IMG/VR virus record: IMGVR_UViG_3300020477_000990 | Location: 124,001 to 188,000 of that record | Length of the DNA: 64,000 nucleotides | Strand: one strand, 5' to 3' | Shown here: piece after piece, positions 2,733 to 50,257 of the stretch | Layout: every line of letters begins with the position of its first letter | Numbering within the stretch: the first letter of the stretch is position 1 | Program-made: the position numbers and the translations under genes | The notes under the pieces: model-generated | Told to the model about the DNA's origin: nothing | Seen by the model: only the letters and a program-made list of their open reading frames with translations | Database searches by the model: none

Positions 2733-2787
2733 AGCACGATTACACTACATGATACACTATACGACATACTAGTGAATAGTAAAAGAA

Positions 2788-3185
2788 TTGTACTATCTGT
2801 GCGTATGAGCACACCCTTGAAAGAAGGGTACCCAAAAAGAGAAACCGCGTCTCGGATCACCGGGGAATCACCACCGAAAAAGTAATTAGTATATGTATAT
2901 CCACGGTCCTCTTAACCGTTAAAAACAGGGTAACCACCATTGATCTATGCTTCCCCATCATGGCCTATATTGTCGCAATTGCGGAGCGGTCTGTCTTTGA
3001 ACAATGACCTTCGGTCATTATCTCCGATCACCCGAAGCACTTATGCTAACGGCTAGTCGCACGTTAGCATGGCGTAGCTTTGGCTGGGTCGTCTTTGATC
3101 AATTGCTCCCTGAATATGTGATCACCATGCTGTATATCGGAGCGACAGCTTCGCGACCTGTTAGCTCTAGGGTGTCGCTAACAGT
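2788..3185 (+). ncRNA. Candidate structured RNA
   Basis: Stems TGTGC/GCACA, ACCCTT/AAGGGT, AATGAC-cUUCGg-TCATT, ATGCTAAC/GTTAGCAT, GGAGC(2983)/GCTCC(3105), TGTTAGC/GCTAACA; the cUUCGg loop favours the + strand. Confidence 0.4.
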
Positions 3186-3218
3186 CAGTCTTAGATAGAT
3201 ATACAGCTATATGGTAGA

Positions 3219-3271
3219 GACCCCGCTGTAAACCATAGGGACCCCGCTGTAACATATACAGACCCCGCTGT
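3219..3271 (+). repeat. Three GACCCCGCTGT direct repeats, exact 21-bp period
   Basis: Copies at 3219, 3240, 3261. Confidence 0.95.
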
Positions 3272-3305
3272 GCGGTCTGATGGATTAGTCAGGAATGTAG
3301 CTGTG

Positions 3306-3414
3306 CCGGGACTAGATCTAGTCATTAGCTCCTGATCTCCAGCTTTAGCTCCGGGACTATATGTTGTGGTGGCCTCGATCTATGCCTCTCATGCGTAGAT
3401 TTATTCCGGGACTA
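3306..3414 (+). repeat. Three CCGGGACTA direct repeats
   Basis: Copies at 3306, 3351, 3406; partial CCGGGAC at 3495. Confidence 0.9.
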
Positions 3415-11362: not shown

Positions 11363-11393
11363 TTGACAGAATCCTATAATATGCTATTATAAT
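11363..11393 (+). promoter_or_regulatory. Early sigma70 promoter with operator overlapping -35
   Basis: TTGACA 11363-11368; ACAGAATCCTAT 11366-11377; TGcTATTATAAT. Confidence 0.75.
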
Positions 11394-11414
11394 AGTATGG
11401 AAGGAACAAAAACA

Positions 11415-12497
11415 ATGATGCAAAAAATTAAACCCCTATTATGGATATTCTTTGGAGTATATTTCTTTGTATGGGGACTAGCAGGATGTAATAATGATGC
11501 TCGTGCAAATGAGAAGCATGACTTATTAAAAACGAATAACGGAATTAGTAGTAAAGATACTACAATTAAAGGTTGGAAGTTTAGAGCAAATAAACATTTA
11601 AAGAAACATATTAAAAAGGGAGACCTTTTATATACATATGATGTAGTTTATGCTAAAGATGGATTTCCAGTTAGATGGGGAGACACATCACAAAAATTTG
11701 AATTAAGAGGTTTACAATGTACATCAGGAGGTTCTGGGGATTGTAAAAGAGAGAATGGTGATTCAAGTTCTAGAATAGAAACTCCAGTTAAAGATTCTTA
11801 CCATATGGGAAACAATTCCGAGTATTGGATTACTTGGTCTATATATGTTCCTGAAGATTATGTATTAATTCATAAAAAGTCTGGGTTAGGTCAATTCCAC
11901 TCTAACCAAGGACCTATGCCATCACAATGGGAATTTAAATTATATAATGATTATAAGCAAAGTGGTTTCCAATTATGGAATTCTGTATCAGGGGATATAG
12001 AAAAAAGATATGATGCTTGTTTTGGTTCAAGCAATTCTTTATCTAAGATGTCTGACAAGAGTGCTAAATTTCATTGGTGTGAAAAACAATATTGGAAATA
12101 TAATTTAATGTCTCTAGAAGAATTTTATTCACATAGAGGTAAATGGATTGACTTTATTGTAAATGTTAAATGGAGTAATAAAGATAAAGGACACTTTAAA
12201 CTTTGGATTAATGGTAAACAAGTAGTTAACCATCAAGGTAAAACAATGCACGATTCAAAACAATATGGATCAAAGTTTAAAGCAACATTCACTTATGGTA
12301 TGTACAACGATAATAAAAAAGGTATATGGGATGTCACAAAAGAAAGATTTGAACAGCCACTAACAATATATTGGGATGAAGTTTGGAGAATGAAGTCTTG
12401 TAAGAAACTAGACCTTGAAAGACTTGGATACTCATGTGATGCTTTAGACAATGGTGGTAAAGAACATCCAGACCTAATCCATGATAAGAGAAGTTAA
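11415..12497 (+). CDS. Polysaccharide lyase-like (heparin lyase I / beta-jelly-roll) lipoprotein
   Basis: Lipobox LAGC; SRIE, EYWITWSIYVP, GQFH, KWIDFIVNVKWS...GHFKLWING, YGMY, IYWDEV motifs. Confidence 0.75.
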   Translation: MMQKIKPLLWIFFGVYFFVWGLAGCNNDARANEKHDLLKTNNGISSKDTTIKGWKFRANKHLKKHIKKGDLLYTYDVVYAKDGFPVRWGDTSQKFELRGLQCTSGGSGDCKRENGDSSSRIETPVKDSYHMGNNSEYWITWSIYVPEDYVLIHKKSGLGQFHSNQGPMPSQWEFKLYNDYKQSGFQLWNSVSGDIEKRYDACFGSSNSLSKMSDKSAKFHWCEKQYWKYNLMSLEEFYSHRGKWIDFIVNVKWSNKDKGHFKLWINGKQVVNHQGKTMHDSKQYGSKFKATFTYGMYNDNKKGIWDVTKERFEQPLTIYWDEVWRMKSCKKLDLERLGYSCDALDNGGKEHPDLIHDKRS

Positions 12498-12520
12498 TTA
12501 GTATGTGTATTAAAATAAGA

Positions 12521-12750
12521 ATTGGGTGCAAGAAGCCAATAGTCGACAGACTTAAAATGTATCAGAGAGGTTTAGCCGATGCGGTGAGTTTACTCTTTAA
12601 ACAAACTCCATTGCGAAGTAGCAACGACCATGAACCACCGACTGTCTTGCTTGGGTGTATAAGAGCTGGGAAGCCAGGACACTTCGCAAACTTAGGTCGT
12701 TCACTAACTAGTCTTAGGAGCCGGGACTTCTTAAACAAAACAGGCTCCAT
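12521..12750 (+). ncRNA. Candidate structured ncRNA or leader with pseudoknot
   Basis: GC-rich intergenic island; TTGCGAAGT/ACTTCGCAA (9 bp) crossed by AACGACC/GGTCGTT (7 bp); hairpins GAGTTT/AAACTC and GGAGCC/GGCTCC both with TTAAAC in the loop. Confidence 0.55.
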
Positions 12751-12768
12751 ATTACAAGGAGAGGCAAT

Positions 12769-13002
12769 ATGAAAAAAATATTACCAATAATTGCAATAGG
12801 CTTTTTATTAAGTGCCTGTAGTGCAACAACTGGTGCTATTACTAAAAAGGATGTCACGACGCTAGGCGGATGTGTTGCTGGTGGTGTTGCTGGATCTCAA
12901 GTAGGTAGTGGTAGTGGTAAGAAATGGGCGATCATCACAGGGACGGTTCTGGGATGTCACGGTGGCTCAATTCTAGGTAAGAAAATCGATCCTGACAACT
13001 AA
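12769..13002 (+). CDS. Glycine-zipper 2TM lipoprotein
   Basis: Lipobox LSAC; GGCVAGGVAGSQVGSGSG glycine zipper; SD AGGAGAGG. Confidence 0.8.
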   Translation: MKKILPIIAIGFLLSACSATTGAITKKDVTTLGGCVAGGVAGSQVGSGSGKKWAIITGTVLGCHGGSILGKKIDPDN

Positions 13003-13067: not shown

Positions 13068-14126
13068 ATGTCAACATACATTAAAATCGTAGACGGAACA
13101 TACGGAAAGAAGGCCGGGAAACCTTTAAGTGTCAAGGGCACAATCTTTCCTATGCTAAAAGCATTTCAAACAGATAAACAGGGTGGCTTTGTCACAGTCG
13201 ATGCAATGAAGGTTCCAAACTTTCCTGCAAGGACTATTAAAGTAAGATGTGAATCACCTAAGTCATATGAGTTTGTTAATGAATCAGATTTCGATAAAAG
13301 TATTAGACACATTGATGCTAATGTGCCAGGCGAAACTGAATCAGAAGCAATTGATAGAATAAGAGAAAGATTCGATATTCTAGATACTATGACGGAAGCA
13401 ACTATGGAAGGAACGGTAAGAGCACTTATTGTTAGTGGCCCTCCAGGAGTTGGTAAATCATACGGTGTTGAAGAGAAGTTAAATGAAGCAAACATCTTCG
13501 ATAAAATATCTGAAAGCAAACCTAAATGGGAAGTTGTCCGTGGGGCAATGAGTGCTATTGGTTTGTATCAAAAGTTGTTTAAGTTTAGTAATAGAGGGCA
13601 CATATTAGTTTTAGATGATTGTGACTCTATCCTATTCGATGACGTTGCACTTAACATACTTAAGGCGGCGTTAGATAGTAGTAAGAAAAGATACATATCA
13701 TGGAATACAGAATCAAGAGTATTGGCCAACGAAGGTGTGCCAGATAGGTTTGAATTCCAAGGTAGTGTTATCCTAATTACAAACATTAAGTTCAACTATG
13801 TTAAGTCCAAGAAGTTGCAAGATCACTTACAAGCGGTAATGTCAAGATGCCATTACTTAGACTTAACAATGGATAGTGTGCGTGATAGGATGTTGCGTTG
13901 CAAACAGATAATAGCAGATGGTGAAATGTTATCCCCATATAAATTTAGTGCTGAACAAGAGCAAAAACTAATAGACTTTATATGGGAGCATAGAGATTCA
14001 CTAAATGAGATTAGTTTAAGAATGGTGACTAAGATTGCTGACTTAATGAAGATGAGTAATGATTGGGAGAAATTAGCCAGAGCAACTTGTATGAAGCGAG
14101 CAATGGCTCAGAATAGAGTTGCTTAA
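13068..14126 (+). CDS. P-loop AAA-type ATPase
   Basis: Walker A GPPGVGKS, Walker B LVLDDCD, sensor ILITN, AVMSRC. Confidence 0.85.
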   Translation: MSTYIKIVDGTYGKKAGKPLSVKGTIFPMLKAFQTDKQGGFVTVDAMKVPNFPARTIKVRCESPKSYEFVNESDFDKSIRHIDANVPGETESEAIDRIRERFDILDTMTEATMEGTVRALIVSGPPGVGKSYGVEEKLNEANIFDKISESKPKWEVVRGAMSAIGLYQKLFKFSNRGHILVLDDCDSILFDDVALNILKAALDSSKKRYISWNTESRVLANEGVPDRFEFQGSVILITNIKFNYVKSKKLQDHLQAVMSRCHYLDLTMDSVRDRMLRCKQIIADGEMLSPYKFSAEQEQKLIDFIWEHRDSLNEISLRMVTKIADLMKMSNDWEKLARATCMKRAMAQNRVA

Positions 14127-14940: not shown

Positions 14941-14980
14941 GAGCTATACAGTAGTACTGTTGTATAGAGCTACAATACTA

Positions 14981-15004
14981 AAGGCCCTACGGGGCCTTTT
15001 TTTA
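14981..15004 (+). terminator. Intrinsic terminator closing the early module
   Basis: AGGCCC-tacg-GGGCCT then long T-tract. Confidence 0.85.
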
Positions 15005-16165
15005 TGAAATTTATTTCGTAAAAGAAAAATAAAAAAATAAAATAATTTTCCCCTGGCCGACCATGTAAATATTCGCACCCTAAAATCGAGGAGACCTAGG
15101 CTATGACGGACGTTATATTTTTTGGGTAAAAAAGGAGAGGTGTAATATAAAGGGCGGTGCTAAAAAAATTGCAGTAAAAAATTTTTAGTTAAACATATAG
15201 AAATCTGTAATGTAGTATTTTTAATAGAAAACAACCCATATATCCAATATACCCCGCGGCAAGAACAATGATGAACTCAACAGAAACGACAGTAGATCAA
15301 CTGTTATAAAGATTGTTGTCCCCCATTCTTATGAAGCAGTAAAGAACTGTGAACTCACAATGAGCTACACAATGAATCCACGATGAAGCATTGTGATGAT
15401 GCTTAAAAATTAAAATGCTATAAAAAATAGCATTTATAACAATACCTCGCGGGAGAGGTATAACTTAATGGATCACTATGACGCTAAAATGGAAAACTGT
15501 GGTAACTGTTAAGGGCTCAACAATTATAGGTTTCTAACCTACAAATATCATGTAGCCAAATATAAACCACCATACAAGTGCTATTAAAATCAACACTATT
15601 GTTGCTATGTCATCACGCATAACACTATTTAAGCAGAGGCATTAACAAACAGGACACACGGGCTTTAAAATAGGATTAAAGGCTCTTATATACGTAGTAC
15701 TAGCTATGCTTATGAACTGTACGCAAATATGCGTTAGGCCTGTTTGTAGCATACTGCTACGGTGAAGTGATTAGTCTACGGAGTGTAATAAACTGTAACA
15801 ATCTTAATAGCTATTAGGCATGGTGGGGCATGGTGGTTGCTGTAGTTAAGAGTCTTCTGCGAGAGCTGGAAAAGGAACGTAAGTTCCGTTCCACTAGCGA
15901 GCAGATATATCCGTATGAACGAGCTATATTATATCCTTTTAATAAAGTTTATTAGATTTTGTAATTTTGGTCGCAAATACAAGCAAATACAATTATAACC
16001 GCCGCACATACAAACTATACAATATAAACCCCACATACACCGCAAATACAATATAATACTATATACCCCGCACATACAAAAAATCGCAAATACAAACTAT
16101 GCAATATAAACACCCCTACAAAAAAATTTTCGCATACACATAAAATACAATATACGCCCCTTGCG
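15005..16165. other. Second large non-coding element (candidate terminus / pac / origin)
   Basis: No ORF of 60 aa or more in about 1.2 kb; many short inverted repeats; repeat array at right end. Confidence 0.7.
15973..16150 (+). repeat. GCA(A/C)ATACAA repeat array, strongly A/C-skewed
   Basis: Exact copies at 15973, 15983, 16004, 16042, 16070, 16086 plus degenerate copies. Confidence 0.9.
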
Positions 16166-16176
16166 TAAATACTATT

Positions 16177-38296: not shown

Positions 38297-41200
38297 ATGG
38301 CTGAGCAATTTGTTGCATCAAAACAATTACCAGTAGTTTTACAATCAACAAAGTTAAAAAACTTTTTTGATTCTACAGTTGACCAATGGTTTAAAAATGA
38401 AGACAATGAATTCACTCATGGATTTGTTGGAAGACGTGAAGGTAGAATTTTTGAACCAAAAAAAGATGCCTACTTAGGTGAACCGTCAGTTGATAGATTT
38501 AATTATCAACTTGAACCTTCGGTTGTAGTTAGAGATAATACTACACAAGGAATTTCATATCAAACTACATACGATGACTTTGTTAATAAATTAAGATTTG
38601 ATGGCGGCCAAATTCTAAATCATAAAAAATTATTTGAAGAAGATTATTATTCTTTTGCTCCACCTATTGACATTGATAAATTTTTAAACTATGCTAATTA
38701 TTATTGGTATCCAACTAAAGATGATTTGTCAACAGAAACAAGTGGAGTATTTCCAAGTTTACCAGCAATTGTAGTTGACGGGTCTGGTGCTACACCTATT
38801 GATCCAGCAACAGATATTATTGGAAAGCAAACATATACAGCACCAGATGCCACGGTGTTTACAAATGGTTTACAAATAAAATTTGGTCAATCAGTTACTA
38901 ATGATGCATATAAATTTAGACATACAATTACTGCAATAAATTTAAATGGCGGTGGATCTCAGTATGCAGTAAATGATAAAATTATAGTTTCAACTGTTAC
39001 TATTGGACACGTTACAAGTATTAATGCAGGGGGAACAATCACAGGAGTAGAATTAACAAATCCAGTTCTTGGTGATGGTGTTACTCCAACAGCGGTAACA
39101 ATCACAACTGCAAGTGGTAATGGTGCATTATTAACTGTTACTACATCACAAACTGATATTACTTACATAATTGAAGGTGTAGGAACAGAAATTAAATTAA
39201 TTGATATAAAAGATTTAAGGAACTTAAATGGACTAACAACTTCGTCAAAAGATTATCTAACAATGCAACGAGGTTGTAAAGATGGTAACATTTGGTCAAA
39301 AACAAACGGATGGGTACATAAAAATACATTAGACAACTATCCTAGTGTAACAACTACAACAGAAGAACAACACCTATGGGATACAGAAGGATGGGCAGGT
39401 CTTCAAACTTGGGATAGTATAACAGTATCGTCTACAACTGCATTTACAAAAACAACCGGTAGAAGAGCTACAAGACCAATTATTGAATTTAATAGTAATA
39501 TGGAATTATACGATTATGGAAAAAATCATATACTTGATGTTACAGTTATTGAAGATACATTAACAAAAACACAAATAGAATCTTATGCTAATATAACTAT
39601 TGATGGTAGGCAAATTCAAAATAGAGATACTATATTATTTCCAAGTGCGGCCAGCCAAGATGATTATGTAGCTTGGGATGGAAACTTGTGGGATCATGAT
39701 ACTGACTCAGATATATCAACAGGTGGCGGTGGACAAACTGGTGGTGATTTAGGTTGGGACGTATCTAGTTCAGCTTTTACAATTGAAGGATCTATTTGGC
39801 AAGTATCTGGTGTAGGAACAGCTCTAACACTTACACAGGTTATTACTAGTGTAAATGAAAATGATAAAGTTTATATTGATAAAGGTACAAAATATGGTAG
39901 TACTGAATGGTACTATGATGGATACAATTGGAATCAAGCACAATTAAAATCTAAAGTAAATATTGCACCATTGTTTAATTTATTTGATAATAATAAAGTT
40001 ATATTAAATGATACAGGAATATATCCATCGTCAACGTTTACAGGTTCAAAAGTATTTGGCTATAAAGTTGGTTCAGGAACCAACGATGCTGAATTAGGAT
40101 TTCCACTATCATATGTGTCTGGTAGTGGTCAAAGTGATATTGAGTTTTGTAACTATCTTAATGTCGATTCATACACATATAATACCTCAACTGCGATATC
40201 AGGATACAAGTTTTATAAGCAATTCTTGTATCCTGAAACTATTGCTAAAACTACAAACTATGAAGTAAATATAAATCCTAGTCAAAGAAATACAGCAAAC
40301 AATGTATTTTATATAAATGGTGAAGAAAGCCCAATATTGATTTTACAAAGAGGAGACACATATAATTTTAAATTTAGTTCTCCAGAAAGTGGAAGTACAG
40401 GTTACACAGGAGTAAATCATCCATTTTATATTTCAACAGGAACTCCTTGGTCATCGGGAACATATACTGGTGAATATACAACTGGTGTAACAGGATCTAG
40501 AGCATACTATGGTGGTGCTTATAGTACATTAGAATTTATAGTTCCGTCAAATGCTCCAGATACATTGTACTATCATTCTGCTACAAGTAATAATCCTGTT
40601 AAATTAGTTATAGTTGATAATCCTATTACTAAAATTAATGAAGCTACAGAAACATTTTATAGAAATGAATGGAACAAAAATTTAGGAAGTAAAAAATTAA
40701 AACAACGTTTAGTTCAAGAACATACAGTTTCAAATACAAATTTAACTACTAAACCAACACTAGAAGTTATACCAACATCTATTATAGATATGGAAGTATA
40801 TAAAAATGGAATTAGACAAAAGTTTGGTACAGATTATACTACAACTGCAAGTGTTATAATTAACTTTACAACTGCATTAGTTGAAAATGATTTTATTAAA
40901 ATTTATTACGAGACAAATGATAATACTCCAATTCGTCAAGTAAACTATTTTGAAATACCAAAGAACCTTGAATCAAATGCTTCAAATGAAGAAGTTGTTT
41001 CAGGAACATATTCAGAATTTTTCCAACACTTTGAATCTATAGTTCAAAACCAAATTGGGTTTACTGGTGATGTAAGTGGAGCAAATAATTATCGCGATAC
41101 TGAAAAAGATTTAGGAAAAGGTAAAGTTATTTTACAACATGATGGTTCACTAATGAAAGTAATGGCATTTGCTAATAATGATGACCTGGATATTATATCA

Positions 41201-44200
41201 TCAATAAGATATGTAAAAAATAGATATCAAGAGTTTCAATTAAAATTTTTAAATGCTGTAAATAAAATTCAAGTATCACAAGATGCTTCTTTGTTAACAA
41301 CTTCACAAATTGTTGATAAAGCAATTAAAAATATTACTATAGATAAAATTGCAACTGATCCATTTACATATTCATTTATGATGGCTAGTGGTGATAGATA
41401 TACTTCAGAATCTCATACTATTACAACAACTAATTATACTTGGGGAAATACAAACACATTCTTACAAAGTAGTGATACACAAGAAGTATTTAATCAAGAG
41501 CCTGGCTTAACAATTGCATCAGCATATGATCCAAAAAATGATTATGATAGTAAAGCATTATACGTTTATAAAAATAATGTATTAATGACATATAATCATG
41601 ATTATATTGTAAGTTATTCTTCATCTGGAACAAAAATTATCTTTATAGGATATGCGGCAAATAAACCAAAAGTTAATGATGTAATTTCAATTAGATATTA
41701 TACAACAATTCAACCAACTTGGATACCACCTACTCCAGCAAAACTAGGAGCGGCAAAAGTTTACCAACCGGTTGAAATATCTGATACTATAACATATTCA
41801 AGTGGAACTAGAAACTTTATACAATGTCATGATGGGTCATTTGTTTTAAAATATAATGATTTAAGAGATACTGCATTATTAGAATTAGAAAAAAGAATTT
41901 ATAACACAATCAATAGAAGATTTACTTCTAGGGATTATGTTCCATTATTAGAAATTAATCAAAAACAACCAAACTATTTTAATTCAACTAGTTGGTCTAG
42001 AAATGATATTATTAATTTAATGCGTCCAATATTTACAAGATGGGCATCAGAAAATGCATTAAACTATCATGAGAATACTGGTTATAATAATGTTCTAACA
42101 TTAACAGGAGTTTCTGGTACATTTAAAGTTGGAGAATCTGTTTCTGGTGCAAGTTCTAAAGCAAAAGGTGTAATTACAAAAATTGCAAGTAATGTAATAA
42201 CTATAAACCAAGTTATTGATAGTTTCCAACTTAATGAAAAAATAACTGGTGCAACAAGTGGTGCAGAAGGTACAACAGATCCAAATGGTGGTATTACTAT
42301 TGATTGGAAAGTAATGAATTACTCTTCATTAAAAGATCCAAATGGAAATAGTTTACCAGGACACTGGCGTGGTATGTATCGTTGGTTCTATGGAACAGAT
42401 AGACCACATACTCATCCATGGGAAATGTTAGGCTTTGCACAAAAACCAATTTGGTGGGATAATTATTATTCTTGGACGGCATCGTCGACAAGAGCAAAAT
42501 TAATAAGTGATGTTGAACAAGGTATTATTAGATCAGGCTTACGTGAAAACTATACTGATAAATCATATCTTAACGCAAATAATGTTTATAAAAAACCAAA
42601 CTTTGCGTCATATGTTCCGGTTGATAATACTGGAAAACTATTAAGTCCAAAAGAAATAGGAATTATTTCAGATAATCCTACAGAATATAATTCACAACTT
42701 GATTGGAAATTTGGAGATGGTGCTCCAGTTGAAAATGCATTTGTTGTTTCTCCGGTATATCAATATGCAATACAAAAAATATTATATTTGACAGCACCAG
42801 GTTTATATGTTGACTTGCTTTGGAATTCAAATGATATATTAAAATCATCAGCTGATGCAACTCAAATTATTGACTCTGTAAGTGGTAAAAGACCTAACAA
42901 TAAAAACTATTATGTCCATAGAGAAGTAGATGCTAATAGTATAACATATAACAGAGCTGGAGTACAAAACTTTTTAGTTGAGTATTTAAATTATGTAGGT
43001 AAGTCAGTTACAGATTCATTTGGTAATGTAATTAGAAACCTACAAACAAATTTATCATATCGTTGTGCAGGGTTTATAGACTCATCAACACTTAAAATTG
43101 AATCACAAGCATATGACTCAGTAAGTAATTCAACTAGCATTGTAATTCCAACAGAAGATATTAATATATCATTACATACAGGTGGAAGCATTGATGAAGT
43201 ATCATATAGTGGTTTTATTGTTCAGGTAGTTGAGCAAGGATATAAGATTTTTGGATACGATATAGTACATCCATACTTTAATGTACTTAGACCAATGATT
43301 TCAGGTAGATCAAAAAAACTTAGAATTGGTGGAAAAGAAGTTTCTCCAGTTTCTTATAAACCTGGAACAACGTATCATACAGATGAAATTGTTAAACATG
43401 AAGACAAATATTATCAAAGCATCACTACTCAAGTAACATTAACAACTGATACTAATCCAGATTTACAAAAATGGAAAGTGCTTAAAGTTTTACCAACAGT
43501 AGGTGGAACAGAAGTAGACCACTATTATGATTTTGATGAATCTAATGTATATCAAATTGATTATGGAACTGTATATAAAACTAGACAACAAGTTTATGAT
43601 GCAATAGTAGGATATGGAAAATATTTAGAATTAGTTGGATGGGACTTTAGTGAGTTTAATGTTGATATTGGAGAAAATAAAAATTGGGATTATAGTGCCA
43701 AAGAATTTTTATTTTGGAGTTTAGGAAAATGGGAAAAAGGAAATTATGTTACATTAAGTCCTAGTGCTGATAAATTAAAATTTATACCAGCTTCAGGTGT
43801 TGTCCAAAGTATTAAAGATATTAATAATGGTGTATATAGTGCATTAAACAAAGAAGGTTTTGGACTAGATTCAAAACAACTAGATGTTATACGTGATGAT
43901 GACATGGTAACAATATCACAAAAAGATGGAATTGGAATTTATGGATTAAGATTATCAGTTAAAGAAACTGAGCATATGATTACATTAGAAAACAAAACTA
44001 TCTTTAATGATACAATTTATAATACAATATTAGCACAAAGACAGCCACGTGTAAAAATTAATACAACTAGAACATTAGGATGGCATGGTAAACTTGAAGC
44101 AGATGGTTATATTATAAGTGGAACGTCATTGCTTAATAACTTTGAAAAATCAGTAACTGATTCTGGAAAATATTATGATATAGAATCTTCTCTTGTAGCT

Positions 44201-47200
44201 ACTAATTTTAGAGATTCAGCTATGCACTTAATTGGATACCAAGAAAGAAATTATTTAACTAATTTACAAATTAGTAAAACAAATCAAGTTAAGTTTTATC
44301 AAGGAATGATAAAACAAAAAGGTACACAAAATAGTATTGATAGATTATTAAGATCAACAACTGTAAGTACTGATCAAACATTTGATACATATGAAGAATG
44401 GGCATTTAAAGTTGGTGAATTTGGCTCAACAGCTTTTGATCAAAAAATTGAATTAAGATTAAGAGCAAACGAAGTTGTTAGTGATCCACAAACATTTGAG
44501 TTTTTATTACCATCAGATGCATCAACAACTTCAGGCTATGATAGTCCAACTGATGATGTAATTACAATTGATATTGATGATACAGTACGTTGGTTGAAAA
44601 AACCTAAAGGTGAAAAAACGTTAGCTAATTTATGGCCAGTAGTGTCTACAGTTAATACAGTAGTTCCTACATCAGGTTATGTACATTATGATGATCCAAC
44701 TTATAGAGCATTGAATTCAAATGCACTTGCTAACGTTTATTCATCAGAAACTTCAAATATAGCAATTGGGTCAACAACTTGGGTAGCAAAAGATGATGTA
44801 GCTGGAAGAGATTGGAATGCATATAAATTATATGATACCGGAGATACTATTGATAACGTAGTATCAAATGGTGATGCCAATACTGCAATGAAAGTTACAG
44901 TATCTGGTACAGGCTCAAGTATTGGAGTAGCAAAAGATTTAATTATACATAAAACATATGACGGTGATGGAACACTTGTTATGGATCCTACTAGTTGGGG
45001 CACACACAAAATAACATTATCAACTGCAACGCCAACGGCACCTACAATTACAATTCCATTTTCTGATGTAGCAGGTAGTGGTGCAGAAATGGCAGTAGGG
45101 AATATTAATGGAACGGTATCAACAGTAACAGTTACAGCAGGTGGTGATGGCTTTGCTGTAGGAGATGTAATTTCATTCTCAGGCAGTAATGGAGCAGGTG
45201 GACAAATGACTGTTAATAAAGTTGCCGGCGGAGCAGGTGCTACAGCATCGGCAGTTATAGCAGATACTTTCCCAATTACTTCAATACAAGTTTTAGAACA
45301 AGGTACAGGTTACAGTTCTGCAACTGTTAATATTTCAGGTGGTGGGGGTTCTGGTGCTACTGCAACAGCAACTATTGCCGGCGGTAAAATTACTGCTATT
45401 ACATTAACTGGTGCAGGTTCAGGATATACATATCAGCCTACGATTACAATTACAGGTGATGGAGATGACGCAACTGCTTTTGCTACACTTGGATCAAAAG
45501 CAGATGGACAAATTACATCAATTACTGTTAGCGGAGGCGGAACTGGTTATACAGCAACACCAACAGTTAAAATTACAGACGCTTCTGGTACAGGTGCAAC
45601 TGCAACGGCAGTTATGTCAGCTGGAGCGGTTGCAAGTGTTACAATAACTAATTCAGGTTCAGGATATACAGCACCAACAATTTCATTTACTGGCCCATTA
45701 AGTGGTGCAACTACAGGATCAGAACTAACACTTAATAATGGTGGAGATAATTATGCAGAAGCACCAACGGCATATTCAGTAGTTGATTCTTCAGGCACAA
45801 CAAAAACATCCGGAGTACATTATACACCAGCAACATTTACATATACAGGTGATGGTGCTAGTGGAGTATTTGGTGAAATAAAAGATATTACAATTACAGC
45901 AGGTGGTTCAAATTACCAATCACCAAGTATTAAAATTATTAATGCATCAGGAACAACAGTACATACATTAACAACACCAACTAACATTACACTTACATCA
46001 GGATCTATTACTGCGGTAACAGTTCCAACTGGAGCATGGAATAAAGGATTTAGTGCAGGAGTAATAAGTACTGCAACTGGAAAAATAACAGTTACAGATA
46101 CTAAAGCAAATCATACAGTTAACTTGTCTCCGTCATTAGCTAAAGTACACGCATTAACATCATTAACAGCAAACGTAACTACAGCATTTGATGGGACACC
46201 ATCTGTAACATTAGAAAAATCAGAAGACAATGGAGCATCATGGAGTGCATTATCTACTGCCGCTGTTGATTTAACTACCGTTGCTTCAGCAAACGTTAAT
46301 GTTACAGGAACAATAACTGACAATGCAAACGCAATTGTTAGAGCAAGTATTTCAGTTTCAACAGGAACAACTGGAAATGTTTCTTTATCATTAAATTATA
46401 CTAAAAAAGAATACGCAATAACTAAAAATGGTAATGCTGAATATATTTCAACTGCTGATAATACAACAATTAATTCATCTGGTATTAAATTATTAGATTG
46501 GAAAGATGTTAGATTAAACAATGCGTTAGCAACTGATAAAGCACACGTTGTAACTAGTACAGCAACAACACTTACAAATTTCTTAACAGGAACAGGTTTA
46601 AGCAATAGTGTTTGGACAGAAGGTGCTCTTGTTTGGTTAGATGATGACTTTACTGGTAAGTGGGGAGTATATAGATATACTGCCAATGCAACAATAGTTT
46701 CAAGTTATAATAATATACGTGGAAGTGAACCTGCAAGTTTTTCAGCGGCAGGTGGTACATGGATTTTACATAGTGGAGTAGATTACAGTAACACTTCACA
46801 AACTACTACATCATATTTTGCAAAAACAAAACGTAGACAAAAAGATAGAATAGATACAAAACAATTTAATAAAACGGTTATGTATGATGATAGAAGTCAT
46901 CAAGTTGATTTAAGTATGAATATATTTGATCCATTAAAAGGAATTTTACCTGCATCTGCAGATAGAGAAATCTCATACAAGTCAGAGTTAGATCCTGCAA
47001 TATATAATAATCATAGTGATACTACTTTAATTAGTACAAGTAATCCATGGAAGGATGACTATGTTGGAAAAGTTTGGTGGGATCAATCAACGGCAAGATT
47101 TATTGAATATGAAAGTCATGATAATGATTATAGAAGAACACATTGGGGTCGTTTGTTTGATGGAGCGTCAATTGACGTTTATGAGTGGGTTAAATCAACT

Positions 47201-50200
47201 AAAACACCAAGCACTTATTCAGGAACAGGAACAGTTAAGACAACAACAAATTATGTAAGTGAAACTGTTATTGATGCTTATACTAAAACAAATTTAACTT
47301 ATTACTATTATTGGGTTAAAGATAAAACTACAGTACCAAAATTAGATTCAAGAATAAATGATGTTGCTACGGTATCAAATACAATTCAATCTCCATTAAC
47401 ACAAGGGTTAAGTTATTTTGCACCAGTATCACCGAATTCATTTATGATATCAAATGTAGTTCATAATTTAACTAAAGACAATACTGTATTACAAATTAAT
47501 TATAGAGATCGTGCTGTAAAAGATAAAACAGATGGAGTACACGCACAATGGTTATTAATTAAAGAAAATTACAATGATGCACAAATTCCAAATCAAATTT
47601 GGAATAAAATGGTAGATAGTATTTGTGGTTATGATGCTACAGAAAAAACTGTACCAGATACAACATTGTCAATAAATGATCAATATGGAAATAAAGTTAG
47701 ACCAAGACAAACTTGGTTTAAAGATATTAAAAAAGCAAGAAAGGTATTATTCCAATCATTGAATAATATTACAACTAATATTAGTTTAGATGTTGAAAAT
47801 TCTAATTGGGATAGTACAGTTACAACATCAGTATATAATGAAAAAACAAATTGGTATTACAATACTACATTTAATGATGATACGATTATAGATGAAATTG
47901 TTGATTATAAAGCTGATATAGTTATTGCAAATTTAAATGAAGGTGATGTAGTTAAAGTAAATTATGATTATGCATCTAAATGGGCATTATACAAATATAC
48001 TGATGCAGATTATTTGGCTGGTACAACAACATCAATTGATACAGGTAATTTATCTTTAGTAAGAATTGGTTTACAAACAGCAACCACTAAACTTAAAACG
48101 ACAGTATATACTGAAGATAATTCTATAGCATTGGCTACAGAGTTAAGACAATATTTAACAGCATTAAGAAACAATGTGTTTATTAGTGATAAACTAGGAA
48201 AACAAAATGAAGTACTGTATTCATTAATAAGATATGTATCTAGTGAACAAAGTCATGTAGATTGGTTATTTAAAACAACATACATGAATGTAATTCAACA
48301 AGATACTACATTAACACAAAAAGCATCTTATGAAAAAGATCCGTTTAATGATATTAAATCATACGTTGAAGAAGTTAAACCATACAAAGCTAAAATTAGA
48401 GATTTCTTAAGTAAAAAATCTCCAGCAAGAGAAAATGCAAATATGGCAATGAGTGACTTTACATCTACGTCAGATTATGCAATTAATTCTAGTGGTAGTG
48501 GAACAACAAATCCTACTCCAAAATTTACAACTAAATTAGCATTTGATAGAATTAGTAAAAAAATAACAATACTATCTCCAACAACTAATAATATTGATGC
48601 ATGGATGGGAGTAACAGTTGCTACAATATCTGGAGCAACAAAATCAAACCCAGTTAGCATAACAGCTACCGGACATGGCTTTACAAGTGGAAGACAAGTA
48701 ACAATTGATGGTGTAAATGGAATGACTAACCTTAATACTAATACATATACTATTACAAGAGTTGATGATAATACATTTACTTTAAACTCTACTGATGGTA
48801 CAACCTATGGAGCATATACATCTGGTGGTACAGCAACGGCAGTTGGAGTATCATATACAGCAGGTAAAGAACTTAAACACAATGGTGGCTACTGGCAAGT
48901 TACAACAAATCATACTTCAGGAACATTTATATCTGATGTACAAACAGGTAAATTACAACATTATAATTTTAGTCCTGTAACTGCTCCAACAGATGTTGCA
49001 AGTATTAATCAAATTAAACAAGCAACACCAGAATCATCACACGTTGATAGATTAGCAAAATATCATTTTGCAAGTGAGTTAGCAAACGTTGATACTGCAA
49101 ATACATCTTCAGTAAGTTCGTTTGTAACGTCATTAGAAAATGCTATATCATCTTATACAGATTTAGATATACAACCAATTGGATTTGTTGTTAATAGAGA
49201 TAGAATAGGTCAAGAGTTAACTTCTTTTGCATGGGATAGTTTAAAATGGGATGCCACAGCATTAACTACAAATCCAACAATTGGATTTGCTGATGAGTCA
49301 ACTCAAAATTGGTATGATTCAAAATTTGTAAATGAAAACTTACAATGGAAAACAGGAACAGTATTTGCTAAAGATTCATTTGTAAAATATTCTGACTTAA
49401 CACACTTTACAGCTTGGACGGCATCAACAAGTTATACTGTTGGTGATATTGTTAAACATGAAAACAAAGTTTATGTTGCAAACGTAACACATAAAAATTT
49501 AACAGCAGAAACAACTATGCAAACATCACGTTGGGATGAAGTTGTAGATTTAATTTATTATACAAACGCAGAACATACTGCCGCGGCAACATTTAAAACA
49601 GATTATGATGCAGGCAAGTGGGTATTGGTACAAAAAGTTTTAGACTCTTCAGGATTTGCAAGACCAAACAACGATCCATATCCAGAAGAAGTATTACCAA
49701 TTACTCCTAGAGAAAGTTTATTCATAACTGTTAAAACTTATACAAATGTAACTGGTAGTGGTACTAATGCAGATCCATATGTTGGAGATGGAGACTTATC
49801 ACAATTCCAAATGCATTATAGACCATATGGAACAGTTACATATTTGAGACAAAAATTTGTTGACGATAGCGGAGGAAATTCAACTACAGATCATACAACA
49901 TTAAGTGACGCTTGTAGTGAATATTCAAATATCATTGTAGTATCTGATGCAAGTAAATTACCTACTCCTAAACAATCACAATTAAGTGCTGATGGAGTAT
50001 ATACTGCACAGCCAGGAATAATTTATATTGGTACTGAAAGAATAGAATATAATAAAATTAGCGGAAATAAACTTTTAGATGTAGTTCGTGGTACTAGAGG
50101 AACTACTATTGGAAGTTATAGTCCAGGAGCGGAAGTATATAGTGGAAATACACATATTCCAAGTGCAACTAGTGGATATTATAATGATACCGGTTATAGT

Positions 50201-50257
50201 GTACTTGATAGTGCAAATTCAAATAAATCTTCAGCAAAATACTTGCGAAATGAATAA
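38297..50257 (+). CDS. Giant 3986-aa baseplate/tail structural protein with modular inserts
   Basis: Follows gp25/gp6-like genes; N-terminal LPVVLQS...FNYQLEP; cupredoxin-like, Gly/Thr-rich ~40-aa repeats, FCCH-like and CBM5/12-like segments. Confidence 0.8.
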   Translation: MAEQFVASKQLPVVLQSTKLKNFFDSTVDQWFKNEDNEFTHGFVGRREGRIFEPKKDAYLGEPSVDRFNYQLEPSVVVRDNTTQGISYQTTYDDFVNKLRFDGGQILNHKKLFEEDYYSFAPPIDIDKFLNYANYYWYPTKDDLSTETSGVFPSLPAIVVDGSGATPIDPATDIIGKQTYTAPDATVFTNGLQIKFGQSVTNDAYKFRHTITAINLNGGGSQYAVNDKIIVSTVTIGHVTSINAGGTITGVELTNPVLGDGVTPTAVTITTASGNGALLTVTTSQTDITYIIEGVGTEIKLIDIKDLRNLNGLTTSSKDYLTMQRGCKDGNIWSKTNGWVHKNTLDNYPSVTTTTEEQHLWDTEGWAGLQTWDSITVSSTTAFTKTTGRRATRPIIEFNSNMELYDYGKNHILDVTVIEDTLTKTQIESYANITIDGRQIQNRDTILFPSAASQDDYVAWDGNLWDHDTDSDISTGGGGQTGGDLGWDVSSSAFTIEGSIWQVSGVGTALTLTQVITSVNENDKVYIDKGTKYGSTEWYYDGYNWNQAQLKSKVNIAPLFNLFDNNKVILNDTGIYPSSTFTGSKVFGYKVGSGTNDAELGFPLSYVSGSGQSDIEFCNYLNVDSYTYNTSTAISGYKFYKQFLYPETIAKTTNYEVNINPSQRNTANNVFYINGEESPILILQRGDTYNFKFSSPESGSTGYTGVNHPFYISTGTPWSSGTYTGEYTTGVTGSRAYYGGAYSTLEFIVPSNAPDTLYYHSATSNNPVKLVIVDNPITKINEATETFYRNEWNKNLGSKKLKQRLVQEHTVSNTNLTTKPTLEVIPTSIIDMEVYKNGIRQKFGTDYTTTASVIINFTTALVENDFIKIYYETNDNTPIRQVNYFEIPKNLESNASNEEVVSGTYSEFFQHFESIVQNQIGFTGDVSGANNYRDTEKDLGKGKVILQHDGSLMKVMAFANNDDLDIISSIRYVKNRYQEFQLKFLNAVNKIQVSQDASLLTTSQIVDKAIKNITIDKIATDPFTYSFMMASGDRYTSESHTITTTNYTWGNTNTFLQSSDTQEVFNQEPGLTIASAYDPKNDYDSKALYVYKNNVLMTYNHDYIVSYSSSGTKIIFIGYAANKPKVNDVISIRYYTTIQPTWIPPTPAKLGAAKVYQPVEISDTITYSSGTRNFIQCHDGSFVLKYNDLRDTALLELEKRIYNTINRRFTSRDYVPLLEINQKQPNYFNSTSWSRNDIINLMRPIFTRWASENALNYHENTGYNNVLTLTGVSGTFKVGESVSGASSKAKGVITKIASNVITINQVIDSFQLNEKITGATSGAEGTTDPNGGITIDWKVMNYSSLKDPNGNSLPGHWRGMYRWFYGTDRPHTHPWEMLGFAQKPIWWDNYYSWTASSTRAKLISDVEQGIIRSGLRENYTDKSYLNANNVYKKPNFASYVPVDNTGKLLSPKEIGIISDNPTEYNSQLDWKFGDGAPVENAFVVSPVYQYAIQKILYLTAPGLYVDLLWNSNDILKSSADATQIIDSVSGKRPNNKNYYVHREVDANSITYNRAGVQNFLVEYLNYVGKSVTDSFGNVIRNLQTNLSYRCAGFIDSSTLKIESQAYDSVSNSTSIVIPTEDINISLHTGGSIDEVSYSGFIVQVVEQGYKIFGYDIVHPYFNVLRPMISGRSKKLRIGGKEVSPVSYKPGTTYHTDEIVKHEDKYYQSITTQVTLTTDTNPDLQKWKVLKVLPTVGGTEVDHYYDFDESNVYQIDYGTVYKTRQQVYDAIVGYGKYLELVGWDFSEFNVDIGENKNWDYSAKEFLFWSLGKWEKGNYVTLSPSADKLKFIPASGVVQSIKDINNGVYSALNKEGFGLDSKQLDVIRDDDMVTISQKDGIGIYGLRLSVKETEHMITLENKTIFNDTIYNTILAQRQPRVKINTTRTLGWHGKLEADGYIISGTSLLNNFEKSVTDSGKYYDIESSLVATNFRDSAMHLIGYQERNYLTNLQISKTNQVKFYQGMIKQKGTQNSIDRLLRSTTVSTDQTFDTYEEWAFKVGEFGSTAFDQKIELRLRANEVVSDPQTFEFLLPSDASTTSGYDSPTDDVITIDIDDTVRWLKKPKGEKTLANLWPVVSTVNTVVPTSGYVHYDDPTYRALNSNALANVYSSETSNIAIGSTTWVAKDDVAGRDWNAYKLYDTGDTIDNVVSNGDANTAMKVTVSGTGSSIGVAKDLIIHKTYDGDGTLVMDPTSWGTHKITLSTATPTAPTITIPFSDVAGSGAEMAVGNINGTVSTVTVTAGGDGFAVGDVISFSGSNGAGGQMTVNKVAGGAGATASAVIADTFPITSIQVLEQGTGYSSATVNISGGGGSGATATATIAGGKITAITLTGAGSGYTYQPTITITGDGDDATAFATLGSKADGQITSITVSGGGTGYTATPTVKITDASGTGATATAVMSAGAVASVTITNSGSGYTAPTISFTGPLSGATTGSELTLNNGGDNYAEAPTAYSVVDSSGTTKTSGVHYTPATFTYTGDGASGVFGEIKDITITAGGSNYQSPSIKIINASGTTVHTLTTPTNITLTSGSITAVTVPTGAWNKGFSAGVISTATGKITVTDTKANHTVNLSPSLAKVHALTSLTANVTTAFDGTPSVTLEKSEDNGASWSALSTAAVDLTTVASANVNVTGTITDNANAIVRASISVSTGTTGNVSLSLNYTKKEYAITKNGNAEYISTADNTTINSSGIKLLDWKDVRLNNALATDKAHVVTSTATTLTNFLTGTGLSNSVWTEGALVWLDDDFTGKWGVYRYTANATIVSSYNNIRGSEPASFSAAGGTWILHSGVDYSNTSQTTTSYFAKTKRRQKDRIDTKQFNKTVMYDDRSHQVDLSMNIFDPLKGILPASADREISYKSELDPAIYNNHSDTTLISTSNPWKDDYVGKVWWDQSTARFIEYESHDNDYRRTHWGRLFDGASIDVYEWVKSTKTPSTYSGTGTVKTTTNYVSETVIDAYTKTNLTYYYYWVKDKTTVPKLDSRINDVATVSNTIQSPLTQGLSYFAPVSPNSFMISNVVHNLTKDNTVLQINYRDRAVKDKTDGVHAQWLLIKENYNDAQIPNQIWNKMVDSICGYDATEKTVPDTTLSINDQYGNKVRPRQTWFKDIKKARKVLFQSLNNITTNISLDVENSNWDSTVTTSVYNEKTNWYYNTTFNDDTIIDEIVDYKADIVIANLNEGDVVKVNYDYASKWALYKYTDADYLAGTTTSIDTGNLSLVRIGLQTATTKLKTTVYTEDNSIALATELRQYLTALRNNVFISDKLGKQNEVLYSLIRYVSSEQSHVDWLFKTTYMNVIQQDTTLTQKASYEKDPFNDIKSYVEEVKPYKAKIRDFLSKKSPARENANMAMSDFTSTSDYAINSSGSGTTNPTPKFTTKLAFDRISKKITILSPTTNNIDAWMGVTVATISGATKSNPVSITATGHGFTSGRQVTIDGVNGMTNLNTNTYTITRVDDNTFTLNSTDGTTYGAYTSGGTATAVGVSYTAGKELKHNGGYWQVTTNHTSGTFISDVQTGKLQHYNFSPVTAPTDVASINQIKQATPESSHVDRLAKYHFASELANVDTANTSSVSSFVTSLENAISSYTDLDIQPIGFVVNRDRIGQELTSFAWDSLKWDATALTTNPTIGFADESTQNWYDSKFVNENLQWKTGTVFAKDSFVKYSDLTHFTAWTASTSYTVGDIVKHENKVYVANVTHKNLTAETTMQTSRWDEVVDLIYYTNAEHTAAATFKTDYDAGKWVLVQKVLDSSGFARPNNDPYPEEVLPITPRESLFITVKTYTNVTGSGTNADPYVGDGDLSQFQMHYRPYGTVTYLRQKFVDDSGGNSTTDHTTLSDACSEYSNIIVVSDASKLPTPKQSQLSADGVYTAQPGIIYIGTERIEYNKISGNKLLDVVRGTRGTTIGSYSPGAEVYSGNTHIPSATSGYYNDTGYSVLDSANSNKSSAKYLRNE

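What the first reader, a model, noticed from the sequence alone, without database searches (positions are those of the whole stretch)
12521..12750. Pseudoknotted GC-rich RNA candidate with two matching TTAAAC-loop hairpins
Helix A (12611-12619/12681-12689, 9 bp) and helix B (12623-12629/12695-12701, 7 bp) interleave A-B-A'-B', forming a pseudoknot that encloses CACC/GGTG and CTGG/CCAG stems. The flanking hairpins (12586-12608, 12717-12748) both display TTAAAC, and the last ends about 8 nt before the SD of the lipoprotein gene. It may be a riboswitch-like leader, ribozyme or standalone phage ncRNA; I cannot assign a family.
Basis: partly seen in the sequence, partly recalled or inferred. Interest (0 to 1): 0.7.

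Follow-up and report, generated by a model that had tools for sequence, protein, structure and literature searches.

The report
Conserved pseudoknotted RNA before phage lipoprotein gene
The spacer between a polysaccharide-lyase gene and a small lipoprotein gene of a 328-kb marine phage holds a real, transcribed RNA of about 185 bases with two pseudoknots that matches no known RNA family; oddly, it also keeps an open reading frame whose protein sequence is not conserved.

Summary
In one sequence this is only mildly unusual: 2.8% of shuffles give the same interleaved pair, and the folding z-scores are not significant. Comparison settles it. Twelve haplotypes from marine metagenomes, all lying between the same genes, keep 99.3% of cells paired in seven helices. 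Twelve of 37 pairs show compensatory changes, against 0-1 in slid controls. P5 and Pa also covary.

The first TTAAAC hairpin belongs to a second pseudoknot (P4/P5). Helix B covaries at three positions. Helix A never varies. The 3' hairpin is missing in three haplotypes.

RNA-library contigs from three studies begin at 12521-12540 and run into the lipoprotein gene.

No Rfam family matches, and no copy was found in IMG/VR, INPHARED or GTDB genomes.

ORF89 shows no amino-acid constraint and no confident predicted fold. Yet its frame has no stop in any haplotype, while the other two forward frames carry 13 and 11 polymorphic stop sites.

Best reading: a new structured 5' leader RNA. Its function is unknown and inferred.

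The parts
12521..12701 (+). Conserved core of the structured RNA: a 5' domain (P1, P2, pseudoknot P4/P3/P5) and a 3' domain (helix A, helix B, hairpins Pa and Pb)
   Evidence: Twelve haplotypes aligned (A3-A5). 99.3% of cells paired; 12 of 37 pairs compensatory against 0-1 in slid controls; 0 of 1000 permutations reach this. RNA-library contigs start at 12521-12540.
12521..12540 (+). P1 hairpin: ATTGG 12521-25 with CCAAT 12536-40, 10-nt loop
   Evidence: G-C changes to A-U at the fourth pair; U-A to U-G at two pairs; no unpaired cell.
12541..12552 (+). P2 hairpin: AGTC with GACT
   Evidence: The closing pair is C-G in 5 haplotypes and A-U in 7.
12566..12608 (+). Pseudoknot 1. P4: AGAG 12566-69 with CTCT 12593-96. 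P3 hairpin: 12575-78 with 12582-85. The 3' strand of P4 lies in the P5 loop, and TTAAAC 12597-12602 is loop 3.
   Evidence: P4 covaries at 3 of 4 pairs and P3 at 2 of 4, transversions included. P5 occurs as GAGUUU/AAACUC, GCGUUU/AAACGC and UGGUUU/AAACCA.
12611..12689 (+). Helix A, 9 bp: 12611-19 with 12681-89. It closes a three-way junction with Pa and Pb.
   Evidence: Perfect complementarity; both strands are identical in all 12 haplotypes, so covariation gives no test. RNAalifold places it in the consensus structure.
12623..12701 (+). Helix B, 7 bp: 12623-29 with 12695-701. It interleaves with helix A to give pseudoknot 2.
   Evidence: AACGACC/GGUCGUU in 5 haplotypes; GAUAACC or GAUAGCC with GGUUAUC in 5. 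That is three compensatory positions. Two mixed haplotypes (L075, L074) and the X17 RNA contig have 1-2 mismatches.
12636..12657 (+). Pa, a variable hairpin: CACC 12636-39 with GGTG 12654-57
   Evidence: Five sequence types keep a 4-bp stem: CACC/GGUG, CAUC/GGUG, CAUC/GAUG, CGGU/ACCG. The alignment needs loop indels, so these pairs were counted by eye.
12666..12677 (+). Pb hairpin: CTGG with CCAG, 4-nt loop ending in AG
   Evidence: CUGG/CCAG, CCGG/CCGG and CCUG(A)/(U)CAGG; two compensatory pairs.
12717..12748 (+). Optional 3' hairpin: GGAGCC with GGCTCC, 20-nt loop holding TTAAAC
   Evidence: Identical in 9 haplotypes; absent in L061, L074 and L072. No covariation.
12503..12772 (+). ORF89, the open frame that overlies the RNA. 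Its stop overlaps the lipoprotein start (ATGA).
   Evidence: No stop in this frame in any of 12 haplotypes; 13 and 11 polymorphic stop sites in the other two forward frames. No amino-acid constraint. GC by codon position 0.45/0.45/0.39. pLDDT 50.8. No Pfam or PHROG family.
12511..12516 (+). TAAAAT, a possible -10 hexamer just upstream of the RNA 5' end
   Evidence: Read from the sequence only. There is no good -35 in the window, and relatives carry different AT-rich hexamers here. Unproven.
12769..13002 (+). Glycine-zipper lipoprotein gene that follows the RNA in every haplotype; SD at 12756-12764
   Evidence: Pfam PF05433; synteny.
11397..12497 (+). Polysaccharide lyase gene upstream
   Evidence: Pfam PF14099, E = 6e-21.

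Best explanation
Window 12521-12701, + strand, encodes an RNA family not in Rfam 15. It has two domains, each holding a pseudoknot.

The 5' domain is P1, P2 and an H-type pseudoknot in which P4 pairs into the loop of P5, with the P3 hairpin inserted. The 3' domain is a three-way junction (helix A, Pa, Pb) whose junction strand pairs with the 3' tail (helix B). The unpaired junction nucleotides do not vary.

The RNA is transcribed with a 5' end at or near 12521, and its contigs continue into the glycine-zipper lipoprotein gene. It is therefore the 5' leader of that message.

Shown: the conserved structure, the + strand, the transcription and the 5' boundary.

Inferred: it acts in cis on the lipoprotein (and perhaps AAA ATPase) message as a folded sensor or binding domain, like a riboswitch or a protein operator, or as a stabiliser. 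The overlying frame ORF89 is not an ordinary protein gene.

The confidence given is for the whole statement. For the structured, transcribed RNA alone it is about 0.9; for the cis-acting role, about 0.4.
For: - Covariation: RNAalifold finds 15 pairs with changes on both sides. In seven helices 99.3% of cells pair and 12 of 37 pairs are compensatory, against 0-1 when the 3' partners are slid; 0 of 1000 permutations reach this. P5 and Pa also covary.
- Strand: 19 G-U cells against 3 A-C cells, which points to the + strand.
- Conservation: the core is better conserved than the flanking coding DNA.
- Position: the RNA lies between the lyase and lipoprotein genes in every locus.
- Transcription: contigs from RNA libraries of three studies start at 12521, 12535 and 12540 and run into the lipoprotein gene. 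In X15 the depth is 95 on the element, 22-31 downstream, and zero for about 400 nt upstream. DNA of the same sample (X4) crosses the boundary at about 5x.
- ORF89 is not protein-like: pN/pS 0.56-1.56; variable columns 25/30/28 by codon position, and 10/16/16 among unpaired columns; flat GC by codon position; pLDDT 50.8 and pTM 0.18; ATG 12503 lies upstream of the RNA 5' end; the start codon is not conserved.
Against: - No conserved expression platform. There is no terminator. The core sits at varying distance from the SD, and the sequence between them also varies. No conserved anti-SD exists, and the 3' hairpin is dispensable.
- Helix A has no covariation. Helix B is mismatched in two haplotypes and in one RNA contig.
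- Thermodynamic stability is not above that of shuffles.
- The ORF89 frame is open in all 12 haplotypes, although the other frames carry many polymorphic stops and column shuffles always create stops. A purely non-coding leader does not explain this. Most loci were found through that ORF, which biases the sample.
- The transcript evidence is assembled contigs without strand information, not reads. A primary 5' end cannot be told from a processed one.
Confidence: 0.55

Rival explanations
1. The same structured RNA, but acting on its own. It would be a stable non-coding RNA, transcribed separately or cut from the message, that binds a host or phage factor in trans. Its place before the lipoprotein gene would be incidental.
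For: Junction nucleotides are invariant and peripheral stems covary, yet there is no expression platform. Depth on the element in X15 is about 3-4 times that of the downstream genes. Relatives without the RNA express the lipoprotein from a plain promoter and SD.
Against: RNA contigs run on into the lipoprotein gene. No terminator or defined 3' end was seen. The RNA always has the same neighbour and the same strand.
Confidence: 0.22
2. A dual-use element. The frame is kept open because ribosomes must pass through it, coupling translation from the lyase stop to the lipoprotein start (ATGA overlap). Translation and RNA folding would then exclude each other. The peptide itself would have little or no function.
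For: There are no stops in frame 0 in 12 haplotypes, against 13 and 11 polymorphic stop sites in the other forward frames. 0 of 2000 column shuffles are stop-free. Indels sum to multiples of three (-2/+2, +1/+2, +3). Each lineage has an ATG or TTG between about 25 nt before and 6 nt after the lyase stop, and the frame ends at or just past the lipoprotein ATG, about 25 nt before it in L076. No truncated ORFs were found.
Against: Nearly all loci were found through the ORF's translation, so broken copies would be missed. RNA contigs start downstream of the upstream start codons. No SD precedes ATG 12503 or ATG 12557. The lipoprotein gene has its own strong SD. Gene callers skipped the intact ORF in 4 of 10 loci.
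Confidence: 0.2
3. A self-cleaving ribozyme that cuts the lyase-lipoprotein message at its own 5' edge. That cut would produce the RNA end at 12521.
For: The fold is pseudoknotted with invariant junctions. The RNA 5' end coincides with the first nucleotide of P1. Coverage falls to zero upstream.
Against: No hit to any ribozyme model in Rfam, even at E up to 10. The helix order does not fit the HDV-like or group I pattern. P1 is a simple hairpin. Contig ends are imprecise (12521, 12535, 12540).
Confidence: 0.06
4. ORF89 is an ordinary small protein gene and the RNA pairings are incidental.
For: The frame is open in all haplotypes and its stop overlaps the next start. Homologous ORFs are called in metagenomes.
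Against: pN/pS is about 1 and variation is even across codon positions. Invariant residues coincide with invariant RNA strands. There is no family and no confident fold. Compensatory changes in eight helices cannot come from protein constraint.
Confidence: 0.04

Closest known systems
Riboswitch aptamers built on a junction plus pseudoknot (for example SAM-II/SAM-V, preQ1-III, c-di-GMP-II, and the glutamine-II and manA/wcaG motifs of marine phages)
   Same: Lies in the 5' part of a message. Stems covary around invariant junction nucleotides. Pseudoknotted. Found in marine phage DNA.
   Different: No match to any Rfam model. No conserved terminator or SD-sequestering helix. Two domains of about 185 nt in all. 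Seen only in one narrow clade. Ligand unknown. An open frame overlies it.
Phage T4 gene 32 leader pseudoknot (translational operator)
   Same: An H-type pseudoknot in the 5' leader of a phage gene. This comparison rests on established knowledge; PMC10690425 notes that Rfam holds no model for it.
   Different: The T4 element is small and is bound by the product of the gene it precedes. Here the product is an exported lipoprotein, which is unlikely to bind its own message, and the RNA is far larger.
Dual-function RNAs with both a fold and a reading frame (tmRNA, SgrS/SgrT, RNAIII/hld)
   Same: A conserved fold and an open frame on the same molecule.
   Different: In those cases the frame is short, lies largely outside the structured core, and encodes a conserved peptide or tag. 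Here 60 or more codons run through both pseudoknots and the peptide sequence is not conserved.
HDV-like and other pseudoknotted self-cleaving ribozymes
   Same: Interleaved helices; the RNA 5' end lies at the first helix.
   Different: Here the order is A-B-(two hairpins)-A'-B'. The HDV-like order is P1-P2-P3-P1'-P4-P2'. No Rfam hit.
Large phage-associated RNAs of unknown function (GOLLD, ROOL, HEARO)
   Same: Structured RNAs carried by phages, known from covariation only.
   Different: Those are several times larger and widely distributed. None matches.

Membership tests
Any Rfam 15 family (manA, wcaG, riboswitches, ribozymes, group I introns included) | Score at or above the family's gathering threshold against its covariance model | tested here: not met
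   No hits in the whole window at gathering score. For 12400-12900 at E up to 10, the only match is a 13-bit one to ARRPOF on the opposite strand, whose threshold is 127 bits.
H-type RNA pseudoknot (structural class) | Two interleaved helices, each supported by compensatory changes | tested here: met
   Pseudoknot 1: P4 (3 covarying pairs) and P5 (2 covarying pairs) interleave, with no broken cell in P4. Pseudoknot 2: helix B covaries at 3 pairs, but helix A never varies, so that one is only half tested.
Riboswitch | Conserved aptamer with covarying stems in the 5' untranslated part of the regulated message | tested here: met
   Covariation. RNA contigs start at 12521 and enter the lipoprotein gene.
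Riboswitch | Conserved expression platform (a terminator, or a helix that hides the SD) overlapping the aptamer | tested here: not met
   No + strand terminator lies within the spacer. The stretch between helix B and the SD differs in length and sequence, the 3' hairpin is missing in 3 haplotypes, and no conserved anti-SD exists.
Riboswitch | Specific binding of a small ligand | not testable with these tools
   Needs in-line probing or ITC.
HDV-like ribozyme | Nested double pseudoknot in the order P1-P2-P3-P1'-P4-P2', with cleavage 5' of P1 | tested here: not met
   Here the order is A-B-Pa-Pb-A'-B', with nothing between A' and B' except 5 nt. No Rfam hit. Cleavage was not tested.
Group I intron | P3/P7 pseudoknot with P4-P6 between P3 and P7 and P8 between P3' and P7'; lies inside a gene | tested here: not met
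   The helix order differs. It lies between genes. No Rfam hit.
Protein-coding gene (ORF89) | Open frame kept across relatives | tested here: met
   No stop in 12 haplotypes. The sample is biased towards open copies.
Protein-coding gene (ORF89) | Purifying selection on amino acids, with an excess of third-position changes | tested here: not met
   pN/pS 0.56-1.56; variable columns 25/30/28; 10/16/16 among unpaired columns.
Protein-coding gene (ORF89) | Conserved start codon with a ribosome-binding site; composition like the genome's genes; a family or a confident fold | tested here: not met
   Starts differ between lineages and none has an SD. GC is flat across codon positions. No Pfam or PHROG hit. 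pLDDT 50.8.

The most novel reading that the evidence does not exclude
The element is a structured RNA through which ribosomes must be able to read. Selection keeps a frame of 60 or more codons open across two pseudoknots without constraining the peptide. Translation from the lyase stop through to the lipoprotein start, and folding of the RNA into its active shape, would then be alternative states of one sequence. That would make it a switch that senses translation, or a leader that is both translated and functional as RNA.
Probability: 0.2. Interest if true: 0.8.

Novelty: new variant of a known kind. Interest (0 to 1): 0.62.

Why it matters
This is an RNA family not in Rfam 15, with unusually clean comparative support for its size: eight covarying helices and two pseudoknots. 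It also has direct evidence of expression in the ocean, and it sits in an uncultured 328-kb marine phage.

Invariant junctions surrounded by covarying stems are what ligand-binding or catalytic RNAs look like, so it is a good candidate for biochemical study.

The open frame without amino-acid constraint is a second, separate puzzle. If it is not a sampling artefact, it would be a rare case of selection for ribosome passage through a functional RNA fold.

The case also shows that gene callers report such RNAs as small hypothetical proteins. That hides them from searches limited to intergenic DNA.

Tried and rejected
- Rfam, at gathering score and at E up to 10: nothing. ARAGORN: no tRNA or tmRNA in the window.
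- Thermodynamic z-scores on both strands and on the core: not significant.
- Nucleotide searches gave no match or no usable match: INPHARED by blastn; IMG/VR by three exact patterns; GTDB genomes by a 21-mer. The one metagenome pattern scan was too loose; it stopped at 120 rows and added only L168.
- The 58 IMG/VR loci that share the AAA ATPase carry no copy by blastn, nhmmer or the covariance model. Five related phage records carry none either. The window's own genome has one copy only.
- Eukaryotic 'protein' hits (E = 2e-47) are 38 weak repeats of a 249-nt satellite. Neither Rfam nor model R1 matches that DNA. Rejected as spurious.
- Programmed frameshift from the lyase gene: the ORF is in frame -1 in some lineages and +1 in others, and there is no slippery site. 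Rejected.
- A recurrent phage promoter motif at 12505-12522: no repeated occurrences in the genome. The sigma-70 scan finds promoters only at 11363 and 13007.
- SD sequestration by CUCC 12606-09 or by P4: the complementary bases are not conserved. Rejected.
- Tandem duplication of a unit of about 140 nt: collinear short repeats exist, but alignment z is only 2-2.7. Left open.
- Loci anchored on the lipoprotein protein, fetched to escape the ORF bias, were all near-identical to known haplotypes and were not informative.

Full report
CONTEXT. The window is bases 124001-188000 of a 328,149-bp IMG/VR phage record with direct terminal repeats. The genome is 31.8% G+C. The finding lies in the 271-nt spacer 12498-12768. 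Upstream is a polysaccharide lyase gene (11397-12497; PF14099, E = 6e-21). Downstream are a 77-aa glycine-zipper lipoprotein gene (12769-13002; PF05433) and then an AAA ATPase gene (13068-14126; phrog_1250). All are on the + strand. The spacer is 46% G+C, about the top 1% of 200-nt windows in this genome.

THE OBSERVATION.
- Helix A: 12611-19 with 12681-89, 9 bp.
- Helix B: 12623-29 with 12695-701, 7 bp, interleaved with A.
- CACC 12636-39 with GGTG 12654-57.
- CTGG 12666-69 with CCAG 12674-77.
- Two hairpins, 12586-12608 and 12717-12748, each showing TTAAAC. The second ends 7-9 nt before the SD.

On one sequence this is weak evidence. Of 1000 dinucleotide shuffles, 8.5% hold a perfect stem of 9 bp or more, and 2.8% hold one interleaved with a stem of 7 bp or more. 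MFE z-scores are +0.70 and +0.08 for the two strands and +0.22 for the core. Rfam gives nothing at gathering score. At E up to 10 it gives only a 13-bit chance match on the other strand.

RELATIVES. DNA searches of INPHARED, IMG/VR and GTDB genomes found no copy. Fifty-eight IMG/VR loci that share the ATPase at 48-66% identity also hold none. In the closest of them the gene order differs, and the lipoprotein gene is preceded by a plain promoter and SD (L003) or by a small two-helix membrane ORF (L005).

Homologues were found through the 89-codon frame that overlies the spacer (ORF89, 12503-12772). An exhaustive phmmer search gave two true clusters. The word-indexed search gave 13 clusters at 53-95% identity. 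Their contigs, one locus from a pattern scan (L168) and ten loci anchored on the lipoprotein protein gave 12 distinct haplotypes. All come from marine metagenomes, and all lie between a lyase and a glycine-zipper lipoprotein gene.

The phmmer hits to giant eukaryotic 'proteins' are 38 summed weak matches to a 249-nt satellite. Neither Rfam nor my covariance model matches that DNA. I treat them as spurious.

STRUCTURE. The spacer core is better conserved than the coding DNA on either side. RNAalifold on 12 sequences predicts 43 pairs, of which 15 have changes on both sides with the pair kept. My helix tables give the following.
- P1, 12521-25 with 12536-40: G-C to A-U, plus U-A to U-G.
- P2, 12541-44 with 12549-52: C-G in 5 haplotypes, A-U in 7.
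- P4, 12566-69 with 12593-96: AGAG/CUCU, AGUG/CACU, AGUC/GACU, GGUG/CACC.
- P3, 12575-78 with 12582-85: GCCG/CGGU, GGCG/CGCC, GGUG/UACC.
- P5, 12586-91 with 12603-08: GAGUUU/AAACUC, GCGUUU/AAACGC, UGGUUU/AAACCA.
- Pa: CACC/GGUG, CAUC/GGUG, CAUC/GAUG, CGGU/ACCG.
- Pb: CUGG/CCAG, CCGG/CCGG, CCUGA/UCAGG.
- Helix B: AACGACC/GGUCGUU against GAUAACC/GGUUAUC.

Over the seven helices whose columns align without shifts (37 pairs), 99.3% of cells are standard pairs and 12 pairs are compensatory. With the 3' partners slid by 1-3 columns the figures are 31-46% and 0-1. None of 1000 column permutations reaches either observed value. G-U cells outnumber A-C cells 19 to 3, so the folded strand is the + strand.

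1. P4 and P5 therefore form an H-type pseudoknot, with the P3 hairpin in loop 1, one nucleotide as loop 2, and UUAAAC as an A-rich loop 3.
2. Helix A never varies in any haplotype. It is plausible but untested by covariation. Its invariance suggests a constraint on sequence as well as on pairing.
3. Helix B covaries at three positions, but two mosaic haplotypes (L075, L074) and one RNA contig (X17) combine strands from the two types. In L075 and X17 the result is two G-U wobbles and one A-C, which could be a natural intermediate. L074 has two mismatches and comes from a 3x contig.
4. The 3' hairpin 12717-48 is identical where present and absent in three haplotypes, so it is not part of the core.
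5. The unpaired stretches ACUUAAAAUG, CAUGAA, UAAGAGC and GGAC...ACUUAGGU are invariant or nearly so.

A covariance model (R1) finds one copy in the whole phage genome. It finds none in five related phage records or in the 58 related loci.

TRANSCRIPTION. A k-mer index found the stretch in six RNA libraries. Contigs from three of them, from three studies, begin at 12521 (X15), 12535 (X17) and 12540 (X18). They run to 12773-12776 or on into the lipoprotein gene.

I then laid the runs on L168, which is the genotype of the X15 and X18 contigs. The X15 contig is 100% identical over 299 nt at depth 95. Downstream contigs (lipoprotein 3' end and ATPase) have depths of 22-31. The 400 nt upstream have none, and the 5' part of the lyase gene has 11.5. 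DNA contigs of the same sample (X4) cross the boundary at a flat 4.5-6.

So the RNA has a 5' end at or close to the first base of P1. It is more abundant than its neighbours and is contiguous with the lipoprotein message. The limits: these are assembled contigs, not reads. They carry no strand, their depth is a mean over the whole contig, and a primary end cannot be told from a processed one. A TAAAAT hexamer at 12511-16 could be a -10 box. There is no good -35, however, and relatives carry different AT-rich hexamers there.

THE OPEN FRAME.

Against a protein:
- pN/pS between the window and eight haplotypes is 0.56-1.56.
- Variable columns are 25/30/28 at codon positions 1/2/3, and 10/16/16 among unpaired columns.
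- Invariant residues (RSS, HE, GHFANLG) are simply the invariant RNA strands.
- G+C by codon position is flat, 0.45/0.45/0.39, against a third-position G+C of 0.20-0.32 in neighbouring genes.
- There is no Pfam or PHROG family. AlphaFold2 with the 14-sequence alignment gives pLDDT 50.8 and pTM 0.18.
- Start codons differ between lineages and lack an SD. ATG 12503 lies upstream of the RNA 5' end.
- Gene callers skipped the intact frame in 4 of 10 loci.
- The frame's phase relative to the lyase gene is not constant, so a programmed frameshift is excluded.

For translation of some kind:
- The frame has no stop in any of the 12 haplotypes. The other two forward frames have 2 fixed stops each, plus 13 and 11 polymorphic stop sites.
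- Shuffling columns among haplotypes puts stops in 5.5 of 12 sequences on average, and never gives a stop-free set in 2000 trials.
- Indels compensate to multiples of three.
- Each lineage has an ATG or TTG close to the lyase stop, and the frame ends at or just after the lipoprotein ATG, or about 25 nt before it in L076.
- A search for truncated ORFs found none.

The sample is biased, because nearly all loci were found through this ORF. The lipoprotein-anchored loci turned out to be near-identical to known haplotypes.

INTERPRETATION. I am about 90% sure that this is a conserved, transcribed, pseudoknotted RNA, and that it is a new family in the sense that Rfam 15 has nothing like it. What it does is inference.

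The most likely reading is a cis-acting 5' leader of the lipoprotein (and perhaps ATPase) message. The RNA always has the same downstream gene and strand, its transcript is contiguous with that gene, and it combines invariant junctions with covarying stems.

The lack of any conserved expression platform counts against a classical riboswitch. It keeps a trans-acting stable RNA as a serious rival. A ribozyme that creates its own 5' end is possible but unsupported. An ordinary protein gene is very unlikely. A dual-use element, in which ribosome passage through the fold is itself selected, is the most novel reading the data allow.

A 2023 survey reports over ten thousand candidate structured RNAs in viruses and phages (PMC10690425). 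I could not check whether this motif is among them. The text mentions no lipoprotein- or lyase-associated motif.

Noticed in passing
G000 94952-95270 and elsewhere in the genome (outside the window): ARAGORN reports a permuted tmRNA (tag ADENLALAA) and 16 tRNA genes in the 328-kb phage genome, but none in the window.
   Followed up: no
window 3199-3360: An ORF-free island of 50% G+C holds three direct copies of GACCCCGCTGT about 22 nt apart. There is no Rfam hit and the folding z-score is not significant. It could be a set of protein-binding repeats.
   Followed up: partly
window 2733-3003 and 14941-16176: Further stretches have no ORF of 60 aa or more. The first is 271 nt at 43% G+C. The second is 1.2 kb with a local G+C peak of 47%.
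   Followed up: no
window 12515-12611 against 12659-12750: Five short direct repeats lie in the same order, 134-144 nt apart. P1 resembles Pb, and P5 resembles the 3' hairpin. This hints at an old tandem duplication of a unit of about 140 nt, but alignment z is only 2-2.7.
   Followed up: partly
L060-L076, L168, L197-L206: The RNA haplotypes are mosaics. The 5' domain, the Pa hairpin, the two strands of helix B and the 3' tail occur in different combinations. The end of the lyase gene recombines independently of them.
   Followed up: partly
L005 5228-5436; L003 3190-3327: Related phages that lack the RNA differ here. One has a small two-helix membrane ORF whose stop overlaps the lipoprotein start (ATGA). 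The other has only a terminator, promoter and SD. The gene order there is ATPase, lipoprotein, lyase.
   Followed up: partly
L064 (eukaryotic chromosome, 249-nt satellite): phmmer gave E = 2e-47 for ORF89 against a 3353-aa predicted protein. The score comes only from 38 tandem repeats, each matching weakly. This is a trap for searches with short queries.
   Followed up: yes
window 38297-50257: A single ORF of 3986 aa follows one of 1316 aa. Neither was examined.
   Followed up: no
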